This document shows, one piece after another, positions 717 to 59,797 of a DNA stretch of 64,000 bases (position 1 is the stretch's first letter; each line of letters opens with the position of its first letter). The DNA lies in NCBI RefSeq assembly GCF_003918875.1, contig NW_025766115.1:1364001-1428000 (forward strand). Reading direction: 5' to 3'. The translations under genes and the position numbers were made by a program. The notes beneath the pieces were generated by a model. It did not search any database. It was not told the origin of the DNA and saw only the letters and a list, made by a program, of their open reading frames with translations. Origin of the DNA: Haliotis rubra (Eukaryota).

Positions 717-912
717 ATTTACCGTATTATTTACGGTAGTCATTGTTACGGTCTTCCGTATTATTTACGGTATAATTACTGGCAGCACGGCTGCCGAACT
801 TTCGTTACGCCGTATTATTTACGGTAGTCATCGTTACGGTTTACCGTAAAATTTACGGCATAAATACTGGCAGCATGGCTGCCGAACTTTTACCGTAAAA
901 ATTACGGTAAGG
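717..912. repeat. Short hairpin-type repeats (TTACCGTA-N-TTTACGGTA; TACTGGCAGC..GCTGCCG), probably the subterminal region of a DNA transposon truncating the U1 array
   Basis: Repeated palindromic units; abuts a truncated SINE at about 925. Confidence 0.4.
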
Positions 913-1209
913 TTTCTGATAATTATCGCCTATTGTGGCAAGTTTGGGTTGCTGAAGACCTATTCTACCCCGGTTTCACGGTCTCGAGTAAATATGAAAT
1001 GCTTTAATATTATACTGCCGATGCCACGTTAACGATTTGGTTTTTATAGCATACCCCGACCCACGTACAATGTGTGTCGGGGTAAGTTATGACCTCAAAG
1101 ACATTTAACAATACAAACTGATGTACAGTCAGCTAATAGCAGCAGCAAGAGAGACGGTGTTGGTCACATGTTCCTTGATAGTTGAATTCTATTCTTTGGT
1201 TTGAGTTTT

Positions 1210-1373
1210 CCGGGGGTTGGCGCGGACGCAAACCCCTCCACTTATAAATTACGTACTCGAATCACCCCTATTTGGCGTGATCGCAGGGGTCAGCCAAGCC
1301 AAGGTGCAATGGAAAGGCCTCACCCTGGGAGAACCGATGCTGAGAACGGCCACCTCCCGTACCAGGTAAGTAT
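1210..1373 (-). ncRNA. U1: U1 snRNA variant, class A copy 1
   Basis: Reverse complement starts ATACTTACCTGG; SL1 loop TTCTCAGCAT; SL2 ATTGCAC; SL3; Sm-like AATTTATAAG; SL4 GCG-TCCG-CGC. Several private substitutions. Confidence 0.9.
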
Positions 1374-2063
1374 GCCAGCTCACATTTTCAACACACTACT
1401 TGTTCTGGTAGGGGCTCTCACTAAGCTGAGGTGGCATCACGAGTGTATCTCGGATTATTTAGAAACTACAGCCGTTACCTTTACAATATTGTCAACAGGG
1501 ATGTCTGTGACGGTACTCGTTCATTTTTTGGTCGATATCATTTATTTCATTTTCTTCCAGTTATCATACAGGTAGAGAGAGTTTATCACCCTAACCCATC
1601 TTGGTGAAGGAAAATGTATATTACTGCAGACGTACTTCATACGTCTCTCTGCAAGTACGTTATCTTACATGATACATATGGAAAACGTTTATTGTACGGT
1701 TTCAGATTTTGAAACATCACATTCAAATATTTCCCCATTTGTTCATGCAGACCAGCTTTTCAAAAACGTCTGTCACAGTAGGTAGTTTTATGTGTACTTC
1801 ATAGCACTTGGAATTTCAAATACCTCTACAAGTACATTATCTTCCATCATACGTACGGAATACGTTTTCTGCGTTCCTAGATTTCATCACATTGACAACA
1901 GTTTTCGTGAGCCTATACCCGTCATTTTTTCGAGAACATCTAAGTAGATGTATTCCCCCGTCCCCAGCAGAAGTGGCAATCAGAAATGATACTCTACATG
2001 GAACCAGTTGGGGTTTATTTCGAAACTTTATTAACAATACACGTGACAAAATTAATAACTTTC

Positions 2064-2291
2064 TGGTTTAACCCGCCCTCAGCAACATTCCAGCTATATG
2101 GCGGCGGTCTGTAAATAATCGATTTTGGACCAGGCAATCCAGTGATCAACAGCATGAGCATTGATCTACTTAATTGGGATACAATTACATGTGTCAACAA
2201 AGTCAGCGAGCCTAAAACCTCGACCCCATTAGTCGCCCCTTATAGGTATGGGTTCCTGAAGATCAATTCTAACCCGGATCTTCCCAGGTTC
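2064..2291 (-). mobile_element. SINE family 2 (Nin-like central domain) in a class-A spacer; paralogous copies at 5973-6187 and 9085-9313
   Basis: Matches the recurrent element GACCCGTGAAGATCCGGGTTAGAA...CCATGCTTGTCGTAAGAGGCGACTAA...GCTGGAATATTGCTGAGTGCGGCGTAAAAC. Confidence 0.8.
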
Positions 2292-2430
2292 ACTGTGTGT
2301 CGGGGTAAGTTCTGAACACAAAGACATTTCACAATACAAACTGATGTACAGTCAGCTAACAGCAGCAGCGTGAGAAACGACGGCCACGTCTTTCTTGGTA
2401 GCAAAATTCTATTCTTTGGTTTGAGTTTTT

Positions 2431-2594
2431 CAGGGATTAGCGCGGACGCAAACCCCCACACTTATAAATTACGTACTCGAGTCACCCCTATTTGGCGGTG
2501 ATCGCAGGGGTCAGCCAAACCAAGGTGCAATGGAAAGGCCTCACCCTGGGAGAACCGATGCTGAGAACGGCCACCTCCCGTACCAGGTAAGTAT
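2431..2594 (-). ncRNA. U1: U1 snRNA variant, class A copy 2
   Basis: ATACTTACCTGGTACGGGAGGTGGCCGTTCTCAGCATCGGTTCTCCCAGGGTGAGGCCTTTCCATTGCACCTTGG...GTAATTTATAAGTGTGGGGG...CCCTG; colinear with metazoan U1. Confidence 0.92.
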
Positions 2595-2640
2595 GCCAGC
2601 TCACATTTTCAACACACTACTTCTTCTGGTAGGGGCTCTC

Positions 2641-2654
2641 ACTAAGCTGAGGTG
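2641..2654 (-). promoter_or_regulatory. Putative snRNA PSE, class A (CACCTCAGCTTAGT at -60); also at 1420-1433, 4016-4029, 5318-5331, 6538-6551, 8613-8626
   Basis: Position typical of a PSE; resembles the TCACC-starting vertebrate PSE; pattern shared with class B upstream regions. Confidence 0.65.
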
Positions 2655-3810
2655 GCATCACGAGTGTATCTCGGATTATTTAGGAACTACAGCCATTAAC
2701 TTTACAGTTTGTCCAACAAGGATTTCTGTGACGGTAATCCTTCATATTTTGGTCGATATCATTCACTTCATTTCCTTGATTATCATACAGGTAGACAGTT
2801 TATCACACTAAGCTATCTTGGAGAAGGAAAATGTATATCACTGCAGACGTACACCATACGTCTCTCTACAAGTACATTATCTTACATCATACGTATGGAA
2901 AACGTTTATTGTGCGTTTATCAATTTTCATATTTCACATTCAAAACTGTTAGCGTGAGTTCATATCTCTCAGATTTTCATAAACGTCTCATATTCAAAAT
3001 AGGTACTGCTATGAGAACTTGATAGCACTCGAAATATCAAATGCTACTAAAGATGGGATCGGTTTGTATTATTTTGAAATTTATCCAACGGAAATATCTC
3101 CAATAAAATGCTAAAACATTCATCCAGAAACACTGTATAGCATGAACAGCAAGACATTTTTACCAAAATATGTTCAACAGAGGTAAATGTAAAGTCGTTT
3201 ATTTAGTTTACAAGCGATGGTGCTGACGCACACTAAGTATATCTGTACCCAAATTTTCGTTAAAAGTGCACTACATTGCATCATCAATACAATGCTACTC
3301 GCTCGATTTTCTCTTCCAGGTGCCAGGATTGGTTCCTCTTCATTACCTTCTGTCAGGCTCTGGGTAGCATTTGTATAGCATAGAGAATATCTTTAAAAAA
3401 TATTCAATTCAAAACGGACCTACACTATACGTTTCATTAAATACACTAAATGTTTAAGTAATAAGCAAGAAATAACTATGATTAATATACTGACGTTTTA
3501 AATATTCCAGTAAGGGACACCAGAAATGCATTAACATATCGAACCCGTCTTCGAGGAGCCAACGCTTTAACCACTTATATATTAATATAACTAACTGATA
3601 ATTATTCTTAAAGATTTGGCTAGGAAATGTAGCCTTATATTGCCCATGCCACGTACAATTTCAACCCACCCATTGTGTGTCGGGGTAAGTAATGACCACA
3701 AAGACATTTAACAATACATACCGATGTACATTAGCTAATAACAGCAGCTTGAGAAACGACGGTTGGTCACTTTTCTTGTTACCACAATTCTATTCTTTGA
3801 TTTGAGTTTT

Positions 3811-3972
3811 CAGGGTTAGCGCGGACGCAAATCCCACACTTATAAATTACGTACTCGAGTCACCTATCCATGGCGGTGATCGCAGGGGTCAGCCAAACCA
3901 AGGTGCAATGGAAAGGCCTCACCCTGGGAGAACCGATGCTGAGAACGGCCACCTCCCGTACCAGGTAAGTAT
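3811..3972 (-). ncRNA. U1: U1 snRNA variant, class A copy 3 (altered SL3 loop, shortened SL4)
   Basis: Same core; SL3 reads TCACC-GCCATGGATA-GGTGA. Confidence 0.88.
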
Positions 3973-5108
3973 GCCAGCTCACATTTTCAACACACTTCTT
4001 CTGGTAGAGGCTCTCACTGAACTGAGGTGGCATCACGAGTGTATCTCGGATTATTTAGAAACTACAGCCATTAACTTTACAGTTTTTCCCAACAGGGATT
4101 TCTGTGACAGTAATCCTTCAAGTTTTGGTCGATATCATTCACTTCATTTCCTTCCAGTTATCATACAGGCAGACAGTTTATCACACTAATCTATCTTGGA
4201 GAAGGAAAATGTATATTACTGCAGACGTGCACCATACGTCTCTCTACAAGTATACATCATCTTACATCAAACGTATGGAATACGTTTACTCTAGAGTTTA
4301 TCGATTTCTCAACATGACACTCAAAATTGTTTCAATGAGCTCATGCACACCAGATTTTCATAAACGTCTAAAGTTCAAAGTAGGTAATTTTATGAGCACT
4401 TGGTAGCACCTGAAATATCAAGTACCTCTAACATGGAAAGAGATTGTTTCATTTTGAAATGGGTTCAACAGAAACATCTACGATAGAATGCTAAAACACT
4501 AATCCACAAACACTGTATAGCATGAACAGCATGACATTTTTTCCAATATATTTTCAGCAGAGGTAAATGTAAACTCTTTTATTTAGTTTATAAGCGTTGG
4601 TGCTGACCCACAATCAGCATATATGTACCCAAATTTCCCTTAAAAATGCACTGAAGTGCATCATCAATACGATGCTACTCTCTCGATTTTCTCTTCCAGT
4701 TGCCAGGATTGGTTCCTCTTCATTACCTTCTTGCCAGGCTGGGAGTTGCATTTGTACAGCATACAGAATATCTTTATAATCATTCAATTGAAAACGGACA
4801 TACAGTACACGTTTCATTAAATACACTAAATGTTGAAGTAATAAACAAGAAATATCTATGATTATATAAGTTAATGTAAAATGAATTCATACTAACTGAT
4901 AATTATTAACGATTTGGCTTGGAAACGTAGCCTTATATTGCCGATGCCACGTACAATTTCAACCAACCTACTGTGTGTCGGGGTAAGTTATGAACACAGA
5001 CATTTAACAATACATACTGATGTACAGTAAGGTAACAACAATAGCAGCTTGAGAAACGACGGCCACGTCTTCCTCGTTACCACAATTCTATTCTTTGATT
5101 TGAGTTTT

Positions 5109-5271
5109 CAGGGGTTAGCGCGGACGCAAATCCCCACACTTATAAATTACGTACACGAGTCACCCCTATTTGGCGTGATCGCAGGGGTCAGCCAAACCAA
5201 GGTGCAATGGAAAGGCCTCACCCTGGGAGAACCGATGCTGAGAACGGTCACCTCCCGTACCAGGTAAGTAT
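5109..5271 (-). ncRNA. U1: U1 snRNA variant, class A copy 4
   Basis: Same core as copy 2 with a few substitutions and a 1-nt SL3 deletion shared with copy 1. Confidence 0.9.
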
Positions 5272-6327
5272 GCCAGCTCACATTTTCAACACACTACTTC
5301 TTCTGGTAGGGGCTCTCACTAAGCTGAGGTGGCATCACGAGTGTATCTCGGATTATTTAGAAACTACAGCCATTAACTTTACAGTTTGCCCCAACAAGGA
5401 TTTCTGTGACGGTACTCCTTCATATTCTGGTCGATATCATTTATTTCACTTCCTTCCAGTTATCATACAGGTAGACAGTTTATCACCCTAACCCATCTTG
5501 GTGAAGGAAAATGTATATTACTGCAGACGTACACCATACGTCTCTCTACAAGTACATTATCTTACATGATACGTATGGACAACGTTTATTGTACGGTTTC
5601 AGATTTTGAAACATCACATTCAAATATTTCCCCATTTGCTCATGCATAACCAGCTTTTCAAAAACGTCTGTCACAGTAGGTAATTATATTAGTACTTCAT
5701 AGCACTTGGAATGTCAAATACCTCTACAACTACATTATTTTCCATCATACGTACGGAAAACGTATGCTCCGTTCCTCCATTTCATCACATTGACGACAGT
5801 TTTCGCGAGCGTATACCCGTCAGTTTTCCGAGAACATCTAAGATCTAAGTAGATGTATTCACCCGTCCCCAACCGAAGTGGCAATCAGAAATGATATTCT
5901 ACATGGAATCACTTGGGTTTATTTTGAAACTTTATTAACAAATAAAAAATGTGACAAAATTAATAACTTTCTGGTTTAACGCCGCACTCAGCTCTATGGC
6001 AGCGGTCTGAAAATAATCGATTCTGGACCAGGCAATCCAGTGATCAACAGCATGAGCATTGATCTACTCAATTGGGATACAATTACATGTGTCAACAAAG
6101 TCAGCGAGCCTAAAACTCGACCCCATTAGTCGCCCATTATAAGTATGGGTTCCTGAAGATCAATTCTAATCCGGATCTTCACAGGTTCATTTGTGTGTCG
6201 GGGTAGGTTATGAACACACAGACATTTAACAATACATACTGATGTACAGTCAGCTAACAGTAGCAGCGTGAGAAACGACGGTTGCGTCTTTCTTGGTAGC
6301 AAAATTCTATTCTTTGGTTTGAGTTTT

Positions 6328-6491
6328 CAGGGGTTAGCGCGGACGCACACCCCTCCACTTATAAATTACGTACACGAGTCACCCCTATTTGGCGGTGATC
6401 GCAGGGGTCAGCCAAGCCAAGGTGCAATAGAAAGGCCTCACCCTGGGAGAACCGATGCTGAGAACGGTCACCTCCCGTACCAGGTAAGTAT
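6328..6491 (-). ncRNA. U1: U1 snRNA variant, class A copy 5
   Basis: Same core; SL2 closing pair changed from C-G to U-G. Confidence 0.9.
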
Positions 6492-6991
6492 GCCAGCTTA
6501 CATTTTCAACACACTACTTCTTCTAGTAGGGGCTCTCACTAAGCTGAGGTGGCATCGCGAGTGTATCTCGGATTATTTAGAAACTACAGCCATTAACTTT
6601 ACAGTTTGCCCCAACAAGGATTTCTGTGACGGTACTCGTTCATATTTTGGTCGATATCATACACTTCATTCCCTTTCATTTATCATACAATTAGACAGTT
6701 TATCACGGTAACCTAGCTTGGTGAAGGAAAATGTATATTACTGCAGACGTACACCATACGTCTCTCTACAAGTACATTATCTTACATCATACGTACGGAA
6801 AACGTTTATTGTGCGTCGGTCGATTTTCATATATCACATTCAAAACTGTTAGCGTGAGTTTATACCTACTTGATTTTCATAAACGGCTAATTTTAAATTT
6901 AGGCACTGCTATGAGTACTTGATAACACCTGAAATATATAATACCACTAAACATGGAAGCAGTTTCTATTATTTTGAATTGGTTTAACGGA

Positions 6992-7471
6992 GTGAGTGAG
7001 TTAAAATTTATCGTCACATCGGCAATATTTCAGCCATATCGTGACGAGAACAATTAATTTTATACATAGTAATGAATGGTAAATAGTAAAAACCTGTCAA
7101 CGAAGGACAGTAAAATAACTAGATTATCACAGATTCGAATTTAAAACTAGTAATTGAATCTAATACAGTTTAAACATAGATGACAATACAAGGTAAAAAC
7201 AGGCTATAGATTGCCAACAACTGAAGGTAGATCACCATACTAGGGACCATGGGGACTTACAGTACATTTGCTCCCTGCTTGAACCCTAGCTGGATTTACA
7301 CCATCCCTTCAGCTATTAGCAATTTTAGATAATCCAGCCACAAATTAAACGAACATATATTCTACGATTAAAATGGTAGTAGGTTTAAATTTACTTTGAA
7401 TGTTTTGGGACTTACGTACTCTCCCAGGACAATAATTTTACAGTACTTAACCCCCTTTTAGGGTACAGCCA
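6992..7471 (-). mobile_element. 5'-truncated non-LTR retrotransposon 3' UTR with (CACT)n tail
   Basis: 12-bp TSD TGGTTTAACGGA (6980-6991, 7472-7483); absent from paralogous spacers; 3' end GCTGAAATATTGCCGATGTGACGATAAATTTTAACTCACTCACTC. Confidence 0.75.
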
Positions 7472-7890
7472 TGGTTTAACGGAAATATCTCCAAGAAAAT
7501 GCTGAAACATTCATCCAGAAACACTGTATAGCAGGAACAGTAAGACATATTTTTCAACAAAAAATATTTTCAATAGAGGTAAATGTAAACTCTTTCATTT
7601 AGTTTACAAGCGTTGGTGCTGACGCACGCTCAGTACACCTGTGCCCAAATTTCCGTTAAAAGTACACCACATTGCATCATCAATACAATGCTACTCGCTC
7701 GATTTTCTCTTCCAGTTGCCAGGACTGGTTCCTCTTCATTACCTTCTGCCAGGCTGGGAGTTGCATTTGTACAGCATACAGAATATCTTTAAAATCATTC
7801 AATTGAAAACGGACATACAGTACACGTTTCATTAAATACACTAAATGTTGAAGTAATAAACAAGAAGTAACTGTCACCGAGTAAATGTGA

Positions 7891-8160
7891 GTGAGTGAGT
7901 GAGTTTAGTTCTACGCCGCACTCAGCAATATTCCAGCTATATGGCGGCGGTCTGTAAATAATCGAGTCTGGACAAGACAATCCAGTGATCAACAACATGA
8001 GCATCGACCTGCACAATTAGGAACCGATGACATGTGTCAACCAAGTCAGCGAGCCTGACCACCCGATCCCGTAAGTCGCCTCTTACGACAACCATAAGTC
8101 GCCTTTTGTGGCAAGCCTGGGTTGCTGAAGACCTATTCTACCCCGGATCTTCACGGGTCT
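7891..8160 (-). mobile_element. SINE family 2, full length
   Basis: 13-bp TSD CGAGTAAATGTGA (7878-7890, 8161-8173); (CACT)n tail. Confidence 0.9.
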
Positions 8161-8403
8161 CGAGTAAATGTGAAATAAATTTAATATTAACTGATAATTA
8201 TTATTAACGATTTGGCTTGGAAATATAACCTTATATTGCCGATGCCACGTACAATTTCAACCCACCCATTGTGTGTCGGGGTAAGTAATGACCTCAAAGA
8301 CATTTAACAATACAAACTGATGTACAGTCAGCCAATAGCAGCAGCAAGAGAGACGGTGTTGGTCACATGTTTCTTTCAATTCTATTCTTTGGTTTGAGTT
8401 TTT

Positions 8404-8566
8404 CAGGGGTTAGCGCGGACGCAAACCCCTCACTTATAAATTACGTACTCGAGTCACCCCTATTTGGCGGTGATCGCAGGGGTCAGCCAAACCAATGTGC
8501 AATGGAAAGGCCTCATCCTGGGAGAACCGATGCTGAGAACGGTCACATCCCGTACCAGGTAAGTAT
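8404..8566 (-). ncRNA. U1: U1 snRNA variant, class A copy 6
   Basis: Same core; SL2 loop ATTGCACATT, plus other private changes. Confidence 0.88.
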
Positions 8567-9630
8567 GCCAGCTCACATTTTCAACACATTACTTCTTCTG
8601 GTAGGGGCTCTCACTAAGCTGAGGTGGCATCACGAGTGTATCTCGAAATATTTAGAAACTACAGCCATTAACTTTACAGTTTGTCCAACAAGGATTTCTG
8701 TGACGGTACTCGTTCATATTTTGGTCGATATCATTCACTTCATTTCCTTCCAGTTATCATACAGGTAGACAGTTTATCACCCTAACCCATCTTGGTGAAG
8801 GAAAATGTATATTACTGCAGACGTACACCGTACGTCTCTCTGCAAGTACATTATCTTGCATCATACGTACGGAAAACGTATATTGTACGTTCCTCGATCT
8901 CATCACATTGACAATGTCTTGCGTAAGCCGATACGAGTTAGTTTTCCGAGAACATCCAAGATGTAAATAGATGCATTTACCAGTACCCAACAGAAGTGGA
9001 AATCAGACATGCCACTCAACATGGAACAAGTCGGGTTTTAACTTTGTTAACAAATACATGTGACAAAAGGAATGATAACTTTCTGGTTTAACGCCCAATT
9101 CAGCAATATTCCAGTTATGTGGCGGCGGTCTGTAAATAATCGAGTCTGGACCAAACAATCCAGTGATCAATAGCATGAGCATCGATCTACGCAATTAGGA
9201 TGCCATGACATGAGTCAACCCAGTCAGCGAGGCTGGCCACCCGATCCCGTTAGTCGCCTCTGATGACAAGCATTGGTTACTTAAGATCAATTCTTACCCG
9301 GACCTTCACGGGTTGGGTAGTCACAGTACTGTTTGATACAAATACACGGAAGTGAGAGAGTTTAGTGCATAGGCTGAGACAATTAAGATAATTTAGTTTC
9401 ACTATAAATACTAAATGTTGAAATTATAGCCAAGAAATAGCGAGTTCAGATATAAATAACTAAATATGAATGAATTGTAAGTGATAATTATTATTAAATA
9501 TTTGACATAGAATATTAGACATAGCCTTATTGTATTTTGTTGATGCGACGTACAATTTCAACTCACCCATCACTGATAAACAGTTAACATGGCGATGTTA
9601 TAATGAACCACAACACTTTCAGCATTTGAC

Positions 9631-9650
9631 AATTCTATTCTTTTATTGGA
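9631..9650 (-). terminator. 3'-box-like element (AAAGAATAGAATT) downstream of U1; equivalent element behind every copy
   Basis: Conserved AAA(G/A)A(A/T)TAGAATT about 10-25 nt after the U1 3' end in both classes; similar to the AAARNNAGA part of the snRNA 3' box. Confidence 0.5.
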
Positions 9651-9655
9651 GTTTT

Positions 9656-9820
9656 CAGGGGTTAGCGCGGACGCAGACCCCCACACTTATAAATTACGTA
9701 CTCGAGTCACCCGCATTTGGGGTGATCGCAGGGGTCAGCCAAACCGAGGTGCAATGGAAAGGCCTCGCCCTGGGAGGACCGCCTTGCGGATCACGGTAAC
9801 CTCCCGTACCAGGTAAGTAT
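9656..9820 (-). ncRNA. U1: U1 snRNA, class B copy 7
   Basis: ATACTTACCTGGTACGGGAGGTTACCGTGATCCGCAAGGCGGTCCTCCCAGGGCGAGGCCTTTCCATTGCACCTCGG...CGATCACCCCAAATGCGGGTGACTCGAGTACGTAATTTATAAGTGTGGGGGTCTGCGTCCGCGCTAACCCCTG. Full U1 cloverleaf with compensatory pairs. Confidence 0.96.
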
Positions 9821-9864
9821 GCTTTGGTTTCCTTCAAATCAGTACTAATACTTGCTCTGGAATG

Positions 9865-9878
9865 ACTCACTTGGGGTG
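9865..9878 (-). promoter_or_regulatory. Putative PSE, class B (CACCCCAAGTGAGT at -58); also at 13122-13135, 14562-14575, 16011-16024
   Basis: Same CACCNCARNTNAGT pattern at the same offset. Confidence 0.65.
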
Positions 9879-10885
9879 TTGCGGCTTACATATCGAACCT
9901 ATATAAACAGCAGAGTAATAAGGGAAAATACATCTCTTCTGCATTCAAAATACAAATCAACTTTAATTTTGTGGTATTTACGGTTTTTAATAAGACTGTG
10001 CCCGTTAAACGTAGACTTCATTTGGGATCATAACCGACACAGTTGTGTACACGCATAGTCAACGTATTCCGTCTAATCTCCGTACAGGGTTGAGAGGATA
10101 CAAACATTTATTGAAGGATACGCGAGCCTGAAACCTTACTGGTATTATGTACAACAAATAACTTTGCTAACTGCGAATCAAAGTCTCGGTTTCACTTTCT
10201 ATGTCTTGAATACCGGGATATTAAGAAGCATAATCAACATTAAAGTCTATCAAAGGAGATATCCGAGGCGGCGCTGTTTTGAGTTTGCAAACAATGAAAT
10301 GTGAAGGTCACTTACGTCGACCAATCAAACACTAGCATTTGAACCTGTAGGGTCGCACTGCCTTTCCTTCTGCCTCGACACGAGGTGTAGAGTAAGGTGG
10401 TGTTATTGATTTACCGCTGTAGGTCACAAAACCATGAAAACCCCGTTACGGTCATTGCTGCAAAAGATGCAGGAAACGTCTGGCTTCACTGTGAAAGGGT
10501 TCGACTCGCTGATATACTGTTAAAACGAAGAAAAAGTATTCATTGTTGATCAAAGGCAATTGATAAATTAACATTTTCAAGTGTACACAGTCCAGAAGTA
10601 TTTCGGCATAGATCTTATACAGTTGTCAAACTGAAGGAAATACTACCGACAGCACAAAACAACTTCTAAAATGCCAATCAAAGCGATCTTGGGTCCGTTT
10701 TACATGTTGTCAGCTCATGGACCCAAAATGATTAGACAGGCGGAGGGATGTTTCTTTAAATAGTATTTACCTTTTTCTGGTCATATTATGTATAAGTATG
10801 GAATTTCTTAAAGCCTGGAAAGTAATGATATTTCATCACTGTTTTCCGCTAAATTCATCACAGAACCTATTCATTTCTTTGTAGT

Positions 10886-11343
10886 GTGTGAGTTTAGTTA
10901 AACGCCGATTTAGCAATATTTCATCAAATTGGCAATATTTCATCAAATGGGCTTCACATTGTACATTTGATCTGAAGAAAGACTTTGAACTATCAAAAGT
11001 TCAGTTAGACATTGATATCATTCTTTACGGCAACCCTGCTCTGCCAAATACTATCAATGAAAATATATTTAGACATGTGCATAAATACATTGTACGAAGT
11101 AAGCGCTTCAATTAATCAATGATATGTCTCAATATTATTATGTCCATCCATTACGTCCAATCATTATTGTTCATGTTTCTGATGGGAGCGGGCGGTAATA
11201 AGTTACATAACTTGTGCTCAATCCATTTCAACACTGAATAAAATATGTCCAAACAACAAACATTGTACCCATGTGGGGAATCGAACCCTGGTCTTCGGTG
11301 TGGTGAGCGAACGCGTTAACCACTAGGCTACCCCACTGTCCCC
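10886..11343 (-). mobile_element. SINE family 1 (tRNA-Asp-like head) split by a LINE fragment
   Basis: Tail half at 10886-10964 and head half at 11260-11343. Confidence 0.8.
10965..11259 (+). mobile_element. 5'-truncated CR1/L2-group LINE: ORF2 C-terminus plus 3' UTR
   Basis: Encodes ...DIILYGNPALPNTINENIFRHVHKYIVRSKRFN* (stop 11115), the LLxG..N..IF..V..YI..SKRF end typical of invertebrate CR1-like ORF2; AATAAA and CAA-type tail; TSD ACATTGTAC. Confidence 0.8.
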
Positions 11344-11521
11344 ATCTCTTTGAAACGCATCATTAATACATATTACACCTGTACTACACATACCTGTTAC
11401 AACATACAAATACAACATGATATGTATTACTATCATATAAAGATGATTATAAATTCTATCTCACATACGTGTACATGCTTTTAATAGCATTACACACGCT
11501 GGAATAGGGTTAGAAGAACGG

Positions 11522-11870
11522 GTGAGGTTCGTCGTGCTTGAGAATATTTCGCTCATATGGCATCGTGCATGCATGCGTATGTGTATGTGCGGCTGCTTGT
11601 ACTAGCCCAGACTGAAGCTGGTTTTATAGTGCTAGCCCACTGAGATACCATGCCGCAGTGAAGCATGAATACCCCACTCAGACACATTATACTGACTCCG
11701 AGCCGACCAGTCCTTGTTGTACCCATCAATGCCGAGCGCCAGACGAGCGCCAGACAGGGACCAACAAGTACCATATTTTAACGTCTTTTGGTATGACGCG
11801 GTCGGGGATCGAACCCGCGACCTTCCGCTCTCCGGGCGGACGCTCTAACCACTACACCACGGAGGCGGTC
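11522..11870 (-). mobile_element. SINE family 3 (tRNA head plus Meta/MESC, RUDI-like domain)
   Basis: A box TGGTGTAGTGG, B box GGTTCGATCC, GTCATACCAAAAGAC..AAAATATGGTAC core; TSD TTAGAAGAACGG. Confidence 0.88.
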
Positions 11871-12484
11871 TTAGAAGAACGGCGCCTCATAAACCTTAAG
11901 TACTAAGCTTAGAATCAGTTTTACCCGAGGTTGAAGTTTTGCCCGTTTCACAAAGCAAAGCAGCTAATTAATATAGAATGTAAAGTTGTAATCGTTCGTC
12001 ATGAAGGGATACGAAACTTTCACATTGTAAATTGCATTTTTTCGCGCTTTGGGAGAAAGAGACAAGTTAGTGCAACACGGAACCCAGAAATACGCCACCT
12101 ATTTCACGGGGACTGAAAAATATCAAGTGTGGATCAGACAATCCAGTGATTGTTATTACGAAGAACGATCCATCCGGGTTACGATAACACATATCAACCA
12201 AGTCACTGTGTTTGGTCACTCAATCCATGTGGCCGCATTTCAGAACAATCAAAGGTTGCTGGGGACCATTTTAACCTGTAATCCCCACTGCTATACATGT
12301 CTACTTTTAATCTAGCGCTTAAATTATTCAGTCTAAGAGACAAACACCAAGCACAACAAAATCTCGATACCAAGATATCGATCCGATCACGGTAACAATC
12401 TCGAGAAGACTAATTCTAACGGAGAAATCTCATGTTCCAGCTCCATATCTTTGTTAAAATCAATGAAATAATTGAATACAAAGA

Positions 12485-12707
12485 TTGATTTGTTCTTTAA
12501 CGCCACACTCAGCAATATTCCAGCTATATAACGGCGGTCTGTAAATAAAGTCTGGACCAGACAACCCAGTGATGAGAATCATGAGCATCGAGCTACACAA
12601 TTGGGACACGATGACGTGTCAACCAAGTCAGCGAGCCTGACCACCCTGAAGTCAACTCTTACAAGCATGGGTTACTGAAGACCAATTCTAACTTGGATCT
12701 TCACGGG
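12485..12707 (-). mobile_element. SINE family 2
   Basis: Matches the family consensus; a degenerate copy lies at about 12125-12285. Confidence 0.8.
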
Positions 12708-12912
12708 TGGAATAAAAAGAGACTAAGTGCTTTTTAGCACTGCGCCCCCGTATGAGGACGCCGTGTTTGTTTGGGTGGGAAATCTTCTCTATATTATGAT
12801 TACAAAGGCATTTAACAATACGTACAGTCAGTAACCCACAATATAGCAGCGTGAGAAACGATGTTGTCACATCTTTATTTCTTGCCCAGTTCTATTCTTT
12901 GATTTGAGATTT

Positions 12913-13077
12913 CAGGGGTTAGCGCGGACGCAGACCCCCACACTTATAAATTACGTACTCGAGTCACCCGCATTTGGGGTGATCGCAGGGGTCAGCCAAA
13001 CCGAGGTGCAATGGAAAGGCCTCGCCCTGGGAGGACCGCCTTGCGGATCACGGTAACCTCCCGTACCAGGTAAGTAT
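12913..13077 (-). ncRNA. U1: U1 snRNA, class B copy 8
   Basis: Identical to copy 7 by inspection. Confidence 0.96.
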
Positions 13078-14352
13078 GCTTTGTCTTCCTTCAAATCAGT
13101 ACTAATACTTGGTCTGGAATGACTCACTTGGGGTGTTGCAGCTTACATATCGAACCTATATAAACAGCAGAGTAATAAGGGAAAATACATCTCTTCTACA
13201 TTCAAAACACAAATTAATGTTTAATTTTGTGGTATTATATTTTTTTTAAAGACATTGTGCGTTTTAAGAGTCTGTTTTGTCTCAAGGAACAAAACTGACA
13301 ACATCGTGTGAAGGTGAAGCCTACGTATACCGTCTATTCTCCATACAGGGGCGAGAGAGGGCGAACATTCGTTGAAGCATGCGAGAGTCCGTGAAGCTGA
13401 TATCAGCCATTCACATCAAACAGCTCACTCCGACCTAAATAGCTAACACCAACCTGACACGTCTAATTCCTCACTGCATGTCATGAATACAGCGACAGTA
13501 AACAACATTATCAGAGTCGAAGTCTATTTAAGAGCATGCAACCGAATTCGGAGTGGCGCTGTTCAGAGCTTGCAAACAATGAAAGGCACTACAGCCAATC
13601 AAATCCCAGCTCGCGAACCTTGAGAATGGGTATGAAGCTTGTCTATTTGCTCAGTCAAAACACGAGGTATGCAATTCTAGGTTTCTCTCGACTTTTGTGT
13701 TGTCATTTGTTCTTATCGTTGTTAATCAATCTATTATTTCAACTGTATTCATGAACCAGAGAAGCGTTTGAAATCACGCTTCACTTATCTTTATTAGCAT
13801 TTAACATTTCAATGTCATCGCTAGAAACAATTAATGGTTCAGAGGGGAGGGTTGTTTCACTTCTCTGCAAACACAAAACAGGCGTGGATCGCTGAAACGG
13901 ACCTCGTTGAACGAATAGTTAACACTCTTTATTCCAGCTTCTTATTTATTCTATGGAAATCAAAATAATTGGTAAAGAGAGGGCGGGTATGGAGTAATCG
14001 CTTTTCATTCTACTCCAGCAAGGTCAGGCTGAACATCATCATACGTATATGCAAACAATTAATAAAAGTTAGAATCAACCACGAGAATTATTCTCTATTA
14101 TTTGAGTTGGGGACTAATTCTAACCTGTAAGCCCCCCCCGCGAGATATACCTGTCTACTTACAATAAAAATAGAGGGAGTGTTTTCAGCACTGTGAGCAC
14201 AGCAGTATGAGGACGTAGCGTTTTTTGTGTATGGGGAGACTCCCTTGATTAAGGTTACAGAGGTATTTAACAGTTGGTTAACAACAGCATGAGAAACGAT
14301 GTTGGCCACATCTTTGTATTTAGTACAATTCTAATTTTTGATTTGAGTTTTT

Positions 14353-14517
14353 CAGGGGTTAGCGCGGACGCAGACCCCCACACATATAAATTACGTACTC
14401 GAGTCACCCGCATTTGGGGTGATCGCAGGGGTCAGCCAAACCGAGGTGCAATGGAAAGGCCTCGCCCTGGGAGGACCGCCTTGCGGATCACGGTAACCTC
14501 CCGTACCAGGTAAGTAT
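14353..14517 (-). ncRNA. U1: U1 snRNA, class B copy 9
   Basis: As copy 7 but Sm region AATTTATATG. Confidence 0.96.
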
Positions 14518-15800
14518 GCTTTGTCTTCCTTCAAATCAGTACTAATACTTGCTCTGGAATGACTCACTTGGGGTGTTGCGGCTTACATATCGAACCTATA
14601 TAAACAGCAGAGTAATAAGGGAAAATACATCTCTTCTACATTCAAAACACAAATTAATGTTTAATTTTGTGGTATTATATTTTTTAAAAACATTGTGCGT
14701 TTTAAGAGTCTGTTTTGTCTCAAGGAACAAAACTGACAACATCGTGTGAAGGTGAAGCCTACGTATACCGTCTATTCTCCATACAGGGGCGAGAGAGGGC
14801 GAACATTCGTTGAAGCATGCGAGAGTCCGTGAAGCTGATATCAGCCATTCACATCAAACAGCTCACTCCGACCTAAATAGCTAACACCAACCTGACACGT
14901 CTAATTCCTCACTGCCTGTCATGAATACAGCGACAGTAAACAACATTATCAGAGTCGAAGTCTATTTAAGAGCATGGCAACCGAATTCGGAGTGGCGCTG
15001 TTCAGAGCTTGCAAACAACAATGAAAGGCACTACAGCCAATCAAATCCCAGCTCGCGAACCTTGAGAATGAGTATGAAGCTTGTCTTTTTTATTTGTTCA
15101 GTCAAAACACGAGGTATGCAATTCTCGGTTTCTCTCGACTTTTGTGTTGTCATTTGTTCTTATCGTTGTTAATCAATCTATTATTTCAACTGTATTCATG
15201 AACCAGAGAAGCGTTTGAAATCACGCTTGACTTATCTTTATTAGCATTTAACATTTCAATGTCATCGCTAGAAACAATTAATGGTTCAGAGGGAGGGTTG
15301 TTTCACTTCTCTGCAAACACAAAACAGGCGTGGATCGCTGAAACGGACCTCGTTGAACGAATAGTTAACACTCTTTATTCCAGCTTCTTATTTATTCTAT
15401 GGAAATCAAAATAATTGGTAAAGAGAGGGCGGGTATGGAGTAATCGCTTTTCATTCTACTCCAGCAAGGTCAGGCTGAACATCATCATACGTATATGCAA
15501 ACAATTAATAAAAGTTAGAATCAACCACGAAAATTATTCTCTGTTATTTGAGTTGGGGACTAATTCTAACCTGTAAGCCCCCCCCGCGAGATATACCTGT
15601 CTACTTACAATAAAAATAGAGGGAGTGTTTTCAGCACTGTGAGCACAGCAGTATGAGGACGCAGCGTTTTTTGTGTATGGGGAGACTTCCCTTGATTAAG
15701 GTTACAGAGGTATTTAACAGTTGGTTAACAACATCATGAGAAACGATGTTGGCCACATCTTTGTATTTAGTACAATTCTATTTTTTGATTTGAGTTTTTT

Positions 15801-15966
15801 CAGGGGTTAGCGCGGACGCAGACCCCCTACACATATAAATTACGTACTCGAGTCACCCGCATTTGGGGTGATCGCAGGGGTCAGCCAAACCGAGGTGCAA
15901 TGGAAAGGCCTCGCCCTGGGAGGACCGCCTTGCGGATCACGGTAACCTCCCGTACCAGGTAAGTAT
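15801..15966 (-). ncRNA. U1: U1 snRNA, class B copy 10
   Basis: As copy 9 with a 1-nt insertion before SL4. Confidence 0.95.
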
Positions 15967-16935
15967 GCTTTGGCTTCATTCAAATCAGTACTAATACTTG
16001 GTCTGGAATGACTCACTTGGGGTGTTGCAGCTTACATATCGAACCTATATAAACAGCAGAGTAATAAGGGAAAATACATCTCTTCTACATTCAAAACACA
16101 AATTAATGTTTAATTTTGTGGTATTATATTTTTTTAAAAACATTGTGCGTTTTAAGAGTCTGTTTTGTCTCAAGGAACAAAACTGACAACATCGTGTGAA
16201 GGTGAAGCCTACGTATACCGTCTATTCTCCATACAGGGGCGAGAGAGGGCGAACATTCGTTGAAGTTTGCGAGAGTCCTCGTGAGGCTGATATCAGCCAT
16301 TCACATCAAATAGCTCACTCCGACCTAAATAGCTAACACCGACCTGACACGTCTAATTCCTCACTGCATGTCATGAATACAGCGACAGTAAACAACATTA
16401 TCAGAGTCGAAGTCTATTTAAGAGCATGCAACCGAATTCGGAGTGGCGCTGTTCAGAGCTTGCAAACAACAATGAAAGGCACTACAGCCAATCAAATCCC
16501 AGCTCGCTAAGCTTGAGAATGAGTATGAAGCTTGTCTTTTTTATTTGTTCAGTCAAAACACGAGGTATGCAATTCACGGTTTCTCTCGACTTTTGTGTTG
16601 TCATTTGTTCTTATCGTTGTTAATCAATCTATTATTTCAACTGTATTCATGAACCAGAGAAGCGTTTGAAATCACGCTTGACTTATCTTTATTAGCATTT
16701 AACATTTCAATGTCATCGCTAGAAACAATTAATGGTTCAGAGGGAGGGTTGTTTCACTTCTCTCCAAACACAAAACAGGCGTGGATCGCTGAAACGGACC
16801 TCGTTGAAGGAATAGTTAACACTATTTATTCCAGCTTCTTATGTATTCTATGGAAATGAAAATCATTGGTTAAAGAGAGGGCGGGTGGCCAAATCTTTGT
16901 ATTTAGAACAATTCTAATTTTTGATTTGAGTTTTT

Positions 16936-17100
16936 CAGGGGTTAGCGCGGACGCAGACCCCCACACATATAAATTACGTACTCGAGTCACCCGCATTTGG
17001 GGTGATCGCAGGGGTCAGCCAAACCGAGGTGCAATGGAAAGGCCTCACCCTGGGAGGACCGCCTTGCGGATCACGGTAACCTCCTGTACCAGGTAAGTAT
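16936..17100 (-). ncRNA. U1: U1 snRNA, class B copy 11 (array edge)
   Basis: As copy 9 with G>A at the SL1 base and GGGTGA (class-A-like) at the SL2 base. Confidence 0.94.
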
Positions 17101-17144
17101 GCTTTGTCTTCCTTCAAATCAGTACTAATACTTGGTACAGAAAT

Positions 17145-17158
17145 ACTGAATTGTGGTG
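17145..17158 (-). promoter_or_regulatory. Putative PSE of copy 11 (CACCACAATTCAGT at -58)
   Basis: Motif retained although the surrounding upstream sequence differs from other class B copies. Confidence 0.62.
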
Positions 17159-18329
17159 TCCTTACAAAAAGGGAACATGTTTTGTTTTTTTAAATACAGT
17201 ACACAAGAGTGTGTTTATTCTTTCAAATACTTTGATTAATACATATATATTTTTGTGGTGTATAACATCTACCTACTTGTTGTACATATAACCGACATTA
17301 TGTGCTTATATTGCTTTGCATCAAGTCGCTGCAAGCCGTGGACAAAATGTTGTCAATTACTATTCTCGCGACACGGCTCCTGGTTTCGCCTGCTCACCAG
17401 AAAATCATCCACATGTTGTTACCCACACTGTTACGAGTTCGCGAAGGGTCAAAGATAACAACCAATCAAATCGTATCTAAGGCGCCTGCTCGCGACAGAC
17501 AAGCATTAACTTGATGATGCGCGTACGGCGAGACACTCACTCTGTGCCATAACCGAACAGTATTCGAACCAGTTATCAGACCACTATTCATGAGTAAACC
17601 AAATAAAACATCAACAACAGTGAAACATGGCCCTTTTGAGTATAATTCGAAATATGAACACCCCAGGAAGCTCAGAATGTCGTTTAGAAGTATTATCCTT
17701 ATTATTCTAAAATTATGTATTTTCTTGTCATTGCATATACCTGTAAATCACTATTTCTAAAATTATAAGTGTATCATGACTGGCTATACTGATTCTTTAG
17801 GGGGGAAACGCTGAAAATAGTATGTCGATCATAGTTATGTACTGCGCATGTGTACACATATAAAGTTGATGTGCCTCCATACCTAAAATTATTTCAGACA
17901 TGTTACTCTACATCAATACCAACTTTGATGCTTTTATCATCAAATGCATAGTTCTTATGGAAACTTGATCTTAGCCGCTCTACTATCGAGGTTAACATAC
18001 TACAAGATGACAAATGATCACAAAATGTCAAAGTCATACAGTTGACTTCACAACATCCAGAGATCCCTTCTCCAATCAGCTGTAAAGAGCTGTAAAGCTA
18101 CATACCCTAACAGAAAAACGTGTCAAAATACGCACGAGCCGTAAAGTGAGCGAATGTTGTTGTTGTTGTCGTTGTTGTCAACATATATTGTCACCTGCAA
18201 ATATTATACTAATCACAGGATTGTCTGGTCCAGACACAATTATTTACCTACCGCCACCATTTACCTAGAAAATTGCAGTGTAGCGATAAACCGACAATCA
18301 AACGAAACCAAACCAAAATGTCAATATAG

Positions 18330-19978: not shown

Positions 19979-20242
19979 NNNNNNNNNNNNNNNNNNNNNN
20001 NNNNNNNNNNNNNNNNNNNNNNNNNNNNNNNNNNNNNNNNNNNNNNNNNNNNNNNNNNNNNNNNNNNNNNNNNNNNNNNNNNNNNNNNNNNNNNNNNNNN
20101 NNNNNNNNNNNNNNNNNNNNNNNNNNNNNNNNNNNNNNNNNNNNNNNNNNNNNNNNNNNNNNNNNNNNNNNNNNNNNNNNNNNNNNNNNNNNNNNNNNNN
20201 NNNNNNNNNNNNNNNNNNNNNNNNNNNNNNNNNNNNNNNNNN
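19979..20242. other. Assembly gap (N run)
   Basis: N bases. Confidence 1.
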
Positions 20243-24810: not shown

Positions 24811-24972
24811 ACTCAGTACCCCAGATGCACAGGGTGGTACTGCATATTTACCCAGCCGTACGCTCTGGGCGTTGTCATACTAAATTATCTCAGTGTAACG
24901 ACATTCGAAAGTGTGATAAAGCAAGTGTGGTGCGATCGGCTTTGCGATACGATCGCAGGCCCAGAACTGGTC

Positions 24973-59586: not shown

Positions 59587-59797
59587 NNNNNNNNNNNNNN
59601 NNNNNNNNNNNNNNNNNNNNNNNNNNNNNNNNNNNNNNNNNNNNNNNNNNNNNNNNNNNNNNNNNNNNNNNNNNNNNNNNNNNNNNNNNNNNNNNNNNNN
59701 NNNNNNNNNNNNNNNNNNNNNNNNNNNNNNNNNNNNNNNNNNNNNNNNNNNNNNNNNNNNNNNNNNNNNNNNNNNNNNNNNNNNNNNNNNNNNNNNN
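59587..59797. other. Assembly gap (N run)
   Basis: N bases. Confidence 1.

What the first reader, a model, noticed from the sequence alone, without database searches (positions are those of the whole stretch)
1210..8566. Six-copy family of variant U1 snRNAs whose U1-70K-binding loop is replaced
Seen: all six class-A copies have SL1 = GGGAG..RCCG-[UUCUCAGCAU]-CGGUUCUCCC (copy 6 has one stem mismatch), 2 nt shorter than class B. The new loop is invariant in all six. The 5' end AUACUUACCUG, helix H (GUAC/GUAC), the U1A site AUUGCAC, the SL4 UNCG loop, a PSE-like motif and a 3'-box-like motif are all retained. The stem varies only between G-U (copies 1-3) and A-U (copies 4-6) at one pair. Known: metazoan SL1 loop GAUCACGAAG is the U1-70K RRM site. 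Inference: an amplified, separately promoted U1 class that can still pair with GU donors but lacks normal U1-70K binding or binds a paralogue or other protein, i.e. a candidate alternative U1 snRNP (splicing or telescripting modulator, possibly stage- or tissue-specific). Caveat: copies carry private mutations, so relaxed selection is possible.
Basis: partly seen in the sequence, partly recalled or inferred. Interest (0 to 1): 0.85.

Follow-up and report, generated by a model that had tools for sequence, protein, structure and literature searches.

The report
Variant U1 gene cluster in abalone
Six neighbouring copies of a splicing RNA gene (U1) share an altered version of the loop that normally holds the U1-70K protein; they look like working but loosely constrained "variant U1" genes of a kind already known in humans, and no data available here show whether they are expressed.

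Summary
The window holds 11 U1 snRNA genes, all on the minus strand. Six class A genes (1211-8566, Rfam 98-108 bits) carry the stem-loop 1 (SL1) loop UUCUCAGCAU. Five class B genes (9656-17100, 138-142 bits) carry GAUCCGCAAG.

- **Which class is derived.** A U1 gene on a metagenome contig has the loop GAUCCGCUAG, so the class B loop is normal for this lineage. Class A carries 15 derived changes against 1 for class B (p=0.0005). About half of its fixed changes fall in the loop.
- **"Replaced" overstates the change.** The core UC.GCA of the loop survives. The equivalents of the U1-70K contacts G28, A29, A36 and G37 are lost.
- **What class A keeps.** It keeps the 5' end, helix H, the U1A loop, the Sm site, SL4, a proximal sequence element (PSE) CACCN5TNAGT at -60, and the 3' box.
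- **Constraint is relaxed but present.** Gene diversity is 0.050, against 0.105-0.15 in class A's own flanks (p=2e-5). The 5' half of the gene is tightest and the 3' half is near the flank level. Class B genes differ by 0-3 bases while their flanks differ by 28-60%. Four of the six class A copies have broken stem pairs.
- **Expression is untested.** The public runs that hold class A gave DNA-like contigs.

My best reading is a set of vU1-like variant genes that are probably transcribed and bind U1-70K poorly. A dedicated alternative snRNP remains possible, at about 0.25. The scan had already noted this array's PSE, Sm site and class B loop.

The parts
1211..1373 (-). Class A U1 gene, copy 1 (SL1 loop at 1337-1346)
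   Evidence: RF00003 102.7 bits. G-U variant. C deletion in SL3, C to U in the SL3 3' strand, and changes in SL4.
2431..2594 (-). Class A U1 gene, copy 2 (SL1 loop at 2558-2567); closest to the class consensus
   Evidence: RF00003 106.1 bits. No broken pair; one G-C to G-U change in SL4.
3810..3972 (-). Class A U1 gene, copy 3 (SL1 loop at 3936-3945); the most damaged copy
   Evidence: RF00003 98.1 bits. SL3 loop rewritten, SL4 G to A, and a shortened 3' end. Its PSE lies 3 nt closer to the start because of a 3-nt deletion.
5109..5271 (-). Class A U1 gene, copy 4 (SL1 loop at 5235-5244)
   Evidence: RF00003 108.3 bits. A-U variant. C deletion in SL3, A to U at the junction, and an A-C mismatch in SL4.
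6328..6491 (-). Class A U1 gene, copy 5 (SL1 loop at 6455-6464)
   Evidence: RF00003 102.5 bits. No broken pair. The closing pair of the U1A loop is C-G to U-G.
8404..8566 (-). Class A U1 gene, copy 6 (SL1 loop at 8530-8539)
   Evidence: RF00003 100.5 bits. Broken pairs in the SL1 stem (U-C) and in the SL2 base (A-C).
1420..1433 (-). PSE-like motif CACCTCAGCTTAGT of copy 1. The same motif lies at 2641-2654, 4016-4029, 5318-5331, 6538-6551 and 8613-8626 for copies 2-6.
   Evidence: CACCN5TNAGT starts at -60 in class A (-57 in copy 3) and at -58 in class B and in the U1 of the unrelated contig L001. The block from -75 to -36 has diversity 0.033, against 0.105 further upstream.
1184..1210 (-). 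3' box region (AAACTCAAAYCAAAGAATAGAAT) of copy 1. The same region lies at 2404-2430, 3783-3809, 5082-5108, 6301-6327 and 8377-8403 for copies 2-6.
   Evidence: Conserved within class A and shared with class B, while the sequence just beyond it diverges by 15-19% within class A and about 40% between classes.
9656..17100 (-). Comparator: five class B U1 genes (9656-9820, 12913-13077, 14353-14517, 15801-15966, 16936-17100) with the loop GAUCCGCAAG
   Evidence: RF00003 138-142 bits. The genes differ by 0-3 nt while their flanks differ by 28-60%.

Best explanation
Class A is a young, locally amplified sub-family of U1 snRNA genes. It arose from the lineage-normal class B type inside the same tandem array.

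Shown here:
- The founder picked up about a dozen changes. About half of the fixed ones sit in the SL1 apical loop. They remove the equivalents of G28, A29, A36 and G37 of the U1-70K site, shorten the upper stem by one pair and weaken the hairpin (-12.1 against -16.1 kcal/mol).
- A core unit of about 650 bp (-340 to +150) was then copied at least six times. The copies still exchange sequence.
- PSE, 3' box, 5' end, helix H, U1A loop and Sm site are intact.
- Within class A, selection (or homogenisation) still holds the promoter and the 5' half of the gene. The 3' half drifts at close to the flank rate, and individual copies collect stem-breaking mutations.

Inferred:
- The genes are most likely transcribed by RNA polymerase II through SNAPc and cleaved by Integrator like normal snRNA genes. 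They would then give a U1-like RNA that can pair with GU donors and take up Sm proteins and U1A.
- That RNA should bind U1-70K poorly or not at all.
- By analogy with human variant U1 genes, the RNA is probably a minor, partly quality-controlled species rather than a second mainstream U1.
For: -: six coherent genes with full U1 architecture and a common altered loop.
- PSE CACCN5TNAGT at -60 in class A and at -58 in class B and in L001.
- the 3' box is conserved in both classes.
- gene diversity 0.050 against 0.105 (upstream) and 0.149 (downstream). Variable columns are 23/164 in the gene and 120/384 in the flanks (p=2e-5). The 5' half is at 0.030 and the 3' half at 0.071; the 3' half does not differ from upstream (p=0.31).
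- 5' half against flanks p=2e-6; SL1 against flanks p=0.001; hairpin energies; all four gametes in 8 of 10 site pairs, which means exchange among copies.
- the downstream flank distance from class A to B2 (0.27-0.31) equals that from B2 to B3/B4 (0.28). Over that span the genes differ by 16-25 positions for A against B2, and by 1 for B2 against B3.
- 15 class-A-derived changes against 1 class-B-derived, with L001 as outgroup (p=0.0005).
- the outgroup loop is GAUCCGCUAG.
- Kondo 2015 gives the U1-70K contacts.
- human vU1s with altered SL1 are TMG-capped and Sm-bound, hold little U1-70K, are low in abundance and are mostly splicing-inactive.
- a U1-70K-site mutant U1 is degraded by the NEXT-exosome.
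- an independent DNA run (X14) has a contig over 5197-5376 with the same loop, so the class is not an assembly artefact.
Against: - No transcript evidence of any kind. The runs found hold class A as DNA-like contigs that run into the flanks.
- The lower diversity of the gene and promoter could come partly from preferential gene conversion rather than selection.
- The clustering of changes in the loop (P=0.0004) and the tight conservation of SL1 afterwards fit a selected new loop just as well. That is the rival reading.
- U1-70K binding was judged only by analogy with the human structure. The lineage's own normal loop already differs from the human one at three central positions.
- The UC.GCA core that stacks on the RRM is retained, so some binding may survive.
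Confidence: 0.5

Rival explanations
1. Class A encodes a dedicated alternative U1 snRNP. The new SL1 loop was selected. The particle lacks U1-70K or binds a paralogue or another RRM protein, and it acts in a stage- or tissue-specific way in splicing or in protecting transcripts from premature cleavage.
For: - Changes on the founder lineage are concentrated in the loop: about 5 of 11 fixed events fall in 11 of 167 columns (P=0.0004).
- After amplification, SL1 has 2 variable columns of 34, against 31% in the flanks (p=0.001). The whole 5' half and the PSE are 3-5 times less variable than the flanks.
- All other protein and RNA contact sites, the promoter and the 3' box are kept.
- Class-A-like contigs occur in runs labelled as several other organisms.
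- Developmental switching of U1 isoforms from separate gene arrays is known in Xenopus, mouse, sea urchin and fly.
Against: - Relative constraint is 20-30 times weaker than for the neighbouring class B genes.
- Four of six copies have broken stem pairs or deletions, and the 3' half evolves at about the flank rate.
- No RNA evidence.
- Human U1 variants with altered SL1 are mostly inactive in splicing and are removed by quality control.
- No candidate partner protein was identified.
Confidence: 0.28
2. Class A is a transcriptionally silent array of dead U1 copies. A single inactivated gene was amplified by unequal crossing-over. The apparent conservation of gene and promoter comes from gene conversion among copies and from the short time since amplification.
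For: - Private stem-breaking mutations in copies 1, 3, 4 and 6.
- The founder lineage changed at roughly the rate expected from flank divergence (a rough estimate from about 100 flank sites).
- There is clear exchange among copies (four-gamete test).
- No listed run holds the gene as RNA.
Against: - The gene has significantly fewer variable columns than the flanks of the same unit, which were amplified with it (p=2e-5; 5' half p=2e-6).
- The PSE and 3' box are the best conserved flank segments and match the motif and spacing seen in class B and in another organism's U1.
- No class A copy has been converted at any diagnostic site by class B neighbours.
Confidence: 0.17
3. Assembly artefact: a collapsed or chimeric array with sequencing errors that mimics a second class.
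For: None specific. Tandem arrays are hard to assemble.
Against: - The six copies share 12-13 fixed differences from class B and have distinct, alignable flanks.
- An independent run (X14) gives a contig over the class A promoter and SL1 with the same loop. Runs X1-X3 hold class-A-like contigs.
Confidence: 0.02

Closest known systems
Human variant U1 snRNA genes (vU1 / RNVU1, and the U1-like vU1A genes)
   Same: - They are U1 paralogues with their own PSE-type promoters and 3' boxes, clustered near or apart from the canonical array.
- Many carry changes in the U1-70K and U1A sites. One (vU1A5) has an SL1 described as completely different from the canonical one.
- Their RNAs are TMG-capped and Sm-bound but hold little U1-70K.
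- They are low in abundance, mostly inactive in splicing reporters, and subject to NEXT-exosome or TUT4/7 quality control (PMC3561869, PMC10870369, PMC13573567).
   Different: - Human vU1s are heterogeneous, and many are also changed in the 5' splice-site-pairing end and in their 3' boxes.
- The six abalone copies form one homogeneous class. Their 5' end, U1A loop, Sm site and 3' box are intact, and the class-wide damage is focused on the SL1 loop.
- Expression is shown for the human genes and is not shown here.
Embryonic versus somatic U1 gene arrays of Xenopus, mouse (U1b), sea urchin and Drosophila
   Same: Separate tandem or clustered U1 gene sets with different promoters give isoforms that switch during development (summarised in PMC4291461). 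The repeat unit of about 1.2-1.4 kb is of the same order as the sea urchin U1 repeat; that figure is from memory and was not checked.
   Different: As far as I recall, those isoforms differ by a few nucleotides and keep the U1-70K loop. Here the loop itself is altered, and constraint is visibly relaxed.
Canonical U1 snRNA (Rfam RF00003) of the same lineage (class B and contig L001)
   Same: Class A shares with it the 5' end, the four-way junction, the U1A loop, the Sm region, SL4, the PSE motif and spacing, and the 3' box.
   Different: The SL1 loop is UUCUCAGCAU rather than GAUCCGC(A/U)AG. The hairpin is one pair shorter and about 4 kcal/mol weaker. There is an extra G and an AG-for-GC change in SL3, and a U-for-C change in SL4. 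Rfam scores are about 35 bits lower.

Membership tests
U1 spliceosomal snRNA (RF00003) | Covariance-model score above the curated gathering threshold over the full model | tested here: met
   98.1-108.3 bits against a threshold of 69.5, model positions 1-166 of 166, for all six copies.
U1 spliceosomal snRNA (RF00003) | Invariant single-stranded 5' end AUACUUACCUG that pairs with the 5' splice site | tested here: met
   Exact in all 11 genes.
U1 spliceosomal snRNA (RF00003) | Four-way junction (helix H with SL1, SL2 and SL3), followed by the Sm site and SL4 | tested here: met
   The RNAalifold consensus over the 11 genes gives this fold. Copies 2 and 5 have no broken pair; copies 1, 3, 4 and 6 have 1-3.
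U1 spliceosomal snRNA (RF00003) | U1A-binding loop AUUGCAC in SL2 | tested here: met
   Present in all six. In copy 5 the closing pair is C-G to U-G.
U1 spliceosomal snRNA (RF00003) | U1-70K-binding SL1 loop (metazoan GAUCACGAAG; in this lineage GAUCCGC(A/U)AG) | tested here: not met
   The class A loop is UUCUCAGCAU. The equivalents of G28, A29, A36 and G37 are lost, and U30, C31, A32 and A35 are kept. Actual binding was not testable.
U1 spliceosomal snRNA (RF00003) | Sm site of the form R-A-U(3-6)-G-R | tested here: inconclusive
   AAUUUAUAAG in all class A copies and AAUUUAUA(A/U)G in class B. The outgroup L001 has AAUUUUUUAG. The site is atypical but is shared with the presumably functional class B.
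Pol II snRNA-type gene (active variant U1 gene, vU1-like) | PSE at about -55 to -60, and a 3' box within about 20 nt of the 3' end | tested here: met
   CACCN5TNAGT at -60 (class A) and at -58 (class B and L001). The 3' box is shared with class B. Function is inferred from conservation only.
Pol II snRNA-type gene (active variant U1 gene, vU1-like) | Stable transcripts with a TMG cap and Sm proteins | not testable with these tools
   The run search listed no RNA holder. The four runs laid gave DNA-like contigs.
U1 pseudogene array (neutral decay) | Gene divergence equal to the divergence of co-amplified spacer | tested here: not met
   Gene diversity is 0.050 against 0.105-0.149 in the flanks (variable columns p=2e-5). 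However, the 3' half of the gene (0.071) is not distinguishable from the upstream flank (p=0.31).
U1 pseudogene array (neutral decay) | Loss of promoter or 3' processing signals | tested here: not met
   PSE and 3' box are intact in all six. Only copy 3 has its PSE spacing altered, by a 3-nt deletion.

The most novel reading that the evidence does not exclude
Abalone keeps a second, selected class of U1 snRNP. Its SL1 loop was remodelled so that it no longer takes up U1-70K, or takes up a different RRM protein. The result would be a particle that still recognises GU donors but is uncoupled from U1-70K-dependent functions (SR-protein bridging, inhibition of poly(A) polymerase). It would be expressed from its own promoter in particular stages or tissues.
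Probability: 0.22. Interest if true: 0.7.

Novelty: new member of a known kind. Interest (0 to 1): 0.36.

Why it matters
If class A RNA is made and assembled, it would be a natural, homogeneous U1 variant in which essentially only the U1-70K site is disabled. That is cleaner than the heterogeneous human vU1s as a system for asking what a U1 particle does without U1-70K, and for asking whether snRNA quality control of such variants is conserved outside vertebrates.

If it is not expressed, or is only a decaying offshoot, it is an ordinary example of birth-and-death evolution in an snRNA gene array. Its main use would then be the side-by-side contrast in constraint between two classes in one array. 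The array also defines the snRNA PSE and 3' box of this mollusc lineage.

Tried and rejected
1. **Expression from public reads.** The run search with copy 2 used only 13 sampled words and listed no run on record as RNA. I laid X1, X2, X3 and X14 on 5000-9900. The contigs over class A ran into the promoter or into unlike flanks, which is DNA-like. Class B was not covered in X1-X3, but a filter for human-like conserved sequence makes that hole meaningless. Organism names are coded, so cross-species conservation of the loop could not be read. Only X14's contig over 5197-5376 could be shown to carry the same loop.
2. **Metagenome scan.** A scan for the shared 5' end plus SL1 stem gave a single contig, and it was class-B-like. 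No second scan was allowed.
3. **Literature.** I found no paper in the held library on abalone or mollusc U1 variants.
4. **A template for the new loop.** The 10-mer and its complement occur nowhere else in the window, so a local templated replacement is not supported.
5. **Loop invariance as evidence of selection.** I rejected this as a stand-alone argument. At the gene's own rate of variable columns, ten invariant columns are expected about one time in five.
6. **Other U1 fragments in the window.** There are none. The 1-mismatch match at 50762 is isolated.
7. **A duplicated U1-70K gene.** I could not search for one: no genome-wide access and no tool-supplied query protein.


Full report
**What is there**

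An Rfam scan of the whole window finds eleven full-length U1 snRNA genes and nothing else. All are on the minus strand between 1211 and 17100.

- Six genes score 98-108 bits (class A): 1211-1373, 2431-2594, 3810-3972, 5109-5271, 6328-6491 and 8404-8566.
- Five genes score 138-142 bits (class B): 9656-9820, 12913-13077, 14353-14517, 15801-15966 and 16936-17100.
- The 10-mer TTCTCAGCAT occurs six times in 64 kb, against 0.14 expected, and always at the stem-loop 1 (SL1) loop of class A.
- The 5' end ATACTTACCTG is exact in all eleven genes.

- SL1 stem GGGAGGUG(G/A)CCG / CGGUUCUCCC, with G-U in copies 1-3 and A-U in copies 4-6;
- a G to U mismatch in copy 6;
- helix H GUAC/GUAC;
- AUUGCAC in SL2;
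- a UCCG tetraloop in SL4;
- a length 2 nt shorter than class B.

A BLAST of the class A unit against the window finds no further copies or fragments.

**Which class is the normal one**

The class B loop, GAUCCGCAAG, is not the metazoan consensus either. A scan of public metagenome contigs for the shared 5' end plus SL1 stem returned one contig, L001. Its U1 gene scores 149.7 bits, has the SL1 loop GAUCCGCUAG, and carries the same upstream motif at the same distance. The class B type of loop is therefore normal for this lineage.

With L001 as outgroup, 15 of the consensus differences between the classes are derived in class A and 1 is derived in class B. Tajima's relative-rate test gives chi-square 12.25, p=0.0005.

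Earlier agents of this scan call the genome an abalone. I did not verify that.

**What changed in the loop**

Aligned to class B, the class A loop differs by four substitutions and a 2-nt deletion, and it keeps UC.GCA.

The human U1-70K/SL1 crystal structure (Kondo et al. 2015, PMC4383343) describes these contacts:
- G28 flips out onto Tyr112.
- A29 and A36 close the loop with a trans Watson-Crick/Hoogsteen pair.
- U30 contacts Leu175 and Asp177.
- C31 and A32 stack on the RNP phenylalanines.
- C33 and G34 are held by loop 3 of the protein.
- A35 to G38 stack continuously.

Class A loses the equivalents of G28, A29, A36 and G37. It keeps U30, C31 and A35, and it has A at position 32, as in human U1. 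The upper stem is one pair shorter, and the isolated hairpin is weaker: -12.1 against -16.1 kcal/mol, and -9.6 in copy 6.

"Replaced" therefore overstates the change. Impaired U1-70K binding is a reasonable inference, but it is not a demonstrated fact.

About five of the eleven or so fixed events on the class A founder lineage fall in 11 of 167 alignment columns (binomial P=0.0004). Three explanations fit this clustering:
- one complex mutation;
- loss of constraint on the loop alone, after a first hit;
- selection for a new loop.

No template for the new loop exists elsewhere in the window.

**Signals for transcription and processing**

All eleven genes and the L001 gene carry CACCN5TNAGT. 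It starts at -58 in class B and L001, and at -60 in class A. In copy 3 it starts at -57, because of a 3-nt deletion.

Just downstream of the gene, both classes share AAACTCAAAYCAAAGAATAGAAT.

Within class A, the block from -75 to -36 has diversity 0.033 and the 3' box region has 3 variable columns of 27. Diversity is 0.105 in the distal upstream region and 0.149 further downstream. These are the features expected of an snRNA-type Pol II promoter and an Integrator-dependent 3' box. Their activity is inferred from conservation only.

**How strongly class A is constrained**

The class A copies share an alignable core of about 650 bp, from -340 to +150, at 89-93% identity.

| Segment (class A) | Diversity |
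|---|---|
| Whole gene | 0.050 |
| Gene, nt 1-82 | 0.030 |
| Gene, 3' half | 0.071 |
| Upstream flank (-340 to -76) | 0.105 |
| Downstream flank (+28 to +146) | 0.149 |

- Variable columns are 23 of 164 in the gene and 120 of 384 in the flanks (Fisher p=2e-5).
- For the 5' half of the gene, p=2e-6. For SL1 alone, p=0.001.
- The 3' half is not distinguishable from the upstream flank (p=0.31).

So the refutation criterion "gene divergence equals spacer divergence" is not met for the gene as a whole. It is nearly met for SL3 and SL4.

Class B behaves very differently. Its genes differ by 0-3 nt, while their flanks are 28-60% different or unalignable.

The downstream flank of class A is as far from that of B2 (0.27-0.31) as B2 is from B3/B4 (0.28). 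Over that span, B2 and B3 genes differ at 1 position, while class A genes differ from B2 at 16-25 positions. Relative to flank divergence, class A has therefore changed some 20-30 times faster than class B.

The consensus fold shows broken pairs in four copies:
- copy 6: SL1 U-C and SL2 A-C;
- copies 1 and 4: a deletion in SL3;
- copy 3: SL3, SL4 and the 3' end;
- copies 3 and 4: an A-C mismatch in SL4.

Copies 2 and 5 have no broken pair.

Five informative sites in the gene give all four gametes in 8 of 10 pairs. The copies therefore exchange sequence. Part of the excess similarity of gene and promoter could be homogenisation rather than selection.

**Expression**

It listed 19 runs holding parts of the gene, under nine coded organism labels, and none on record as RNA.

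I laid X1, X2, X3 and X14 on 5000-9900, which spans copies 4-6 and the first class B gene.
- X14 covers 29 of 30 bins, so it is DNA of this or a close species. Its contig over 5197-5376 carries the same loop and the G variant at 5248.
- The X2 and X3 contigs over copy 4 extend 14 and 58 nt into the promoter.
- The X1 contig over copy 6 runs into an unlike downstream flank.

All of this is DNA-like. It shows that the class is not an assembly artefact and that class-A-like genes occur in several sample labels. It says nothing about transcription.

**Comparison with what is known**

Variant U1 genes are well described.
- Human vU1 genes have active promoters. Their RNAs are TMG-capped, Sm-bound and bound by U1-C, but they precipitate poorly with anti-U1-70K and anti-U1A (O'Reilly et al. 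2013, PMC3561869).
- Several human variants have many SL1 changes. vU1A5 has an SL1 described as completely different from the canonical one. These variants are low in abundance, and most fail to support splicing (PMC10870369).
- A U1 with a mutated U1-70K site is degraded by the NEXT-exosome (Ma et al. 2026, PMC13573567).
- Developmental switching between U1 isoforms from separate gene sets is known in Xenopus, mouse, sea urchin and fly (PMC4291461).

I found no paper on abalone or mollusc U1 variants in the held library.

The abalone class is thus a new member of a known kind. Its distinguishing trait is homogeneity: one class-wide lesion focused on the U1-70K loop, with the other functional elements intact.

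**Verdict**

The class is real, separately promoted and not evolving neutrally. It is far less constrained than its neighbours, it is decaying in several copies, and it is untested for expression.
- Most likely (about 0.5): class A is a set of vU1-like variant genes that are probably transcribed, give a minor U1-like RNA and bind U1-70K poorly.
- A dedicated alternative snRNP stands at about 0.25-0.3.
- A silent dead array stands at about 0.15-0.2.

The N runs at 19979-20242 and 59587-59797 were left untouched. The read laying stretch was 4901 letters.

Noticed in passing
window 1211-17100, about 30 nt upstream of each gene's 3' end: All 11 U1 genes have the atypical Sm region AAUUUAUA(A/U)G; contig L001 has AAUUUUUUAG. 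In class A and in the first two class B genes, the adjacent UAAGUGU is complementary to the U1 5' end AUACUUA. The minimum-free-energy folds pair the two. The other three class B genes, with UAUGUGU, do not show this pairing.
   Followed up: partly
window 16936-17220 (class B copy 5): This copy has a G to A change that breaks the basal pair of SL1. Its upstream sequence is unrelated to the other class B copies beyond about -45, although a PSE-like CACCACAATTCAGT still sits at -58. It may be a diverging or decaying member.
   Followed up: no
window 5984-6311, 6968-7459, 7788-8279, 9100-9427: Spacer segments covered at very high summed depth, with many joints, in all four public runs laid. They are high-copy interspersed repeats inserted between U1 units. 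They account for the longer spacers upstream of copy 5 and of the first class B gene.
   Followed up: no
about -290 to -235 upstream of each class A gene, e.g. window 2829-2884: The best conserved distal upstream block in class A (95.6% identity) contains the inverted repeat GACGTA-N5-TACGTC. It may be a distal enhancer element. No 8-mer from this block is shared with the class B upstreams; the only three shared 8-mers lie elsewhere and at other distances.
   Followed up: partly
window 22823-24821: A minisatellite of about 41 copies of a 48-bp unit at 90% match. It creates long spurious ORFs on both strands.
   Followed up: no
window 722-890: Two copies of an 88-bp tandem repeat downstream of class A copy 1.
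   Followed up: no
L001 805-968 (contig Ga0256826_1097385): This metagenome contig carries a U1 gene (149.7 bits) whose first 21 nt match the abalone genes. Its loop is GAUCCGCUAG, and its PSE-like CACCGTCTGTTAGT lies at -58. It is probably from another mollusc-like animal in the sample.
   Followed up: partly
class A downstream flanks, window about 1060-1210, 2281-2430, 3671-3809, 4970-5108, 6178-6327, 8267-8403: By their downstream flanks the copies pair up as 1 with 6 (p-distance 0.04), 2 with 5 (0.11) and 3 with 4 (0.14). This hints at a duplication of a three-unit block. Gene-internal variants do not follow that pairing.
   Followed up: no
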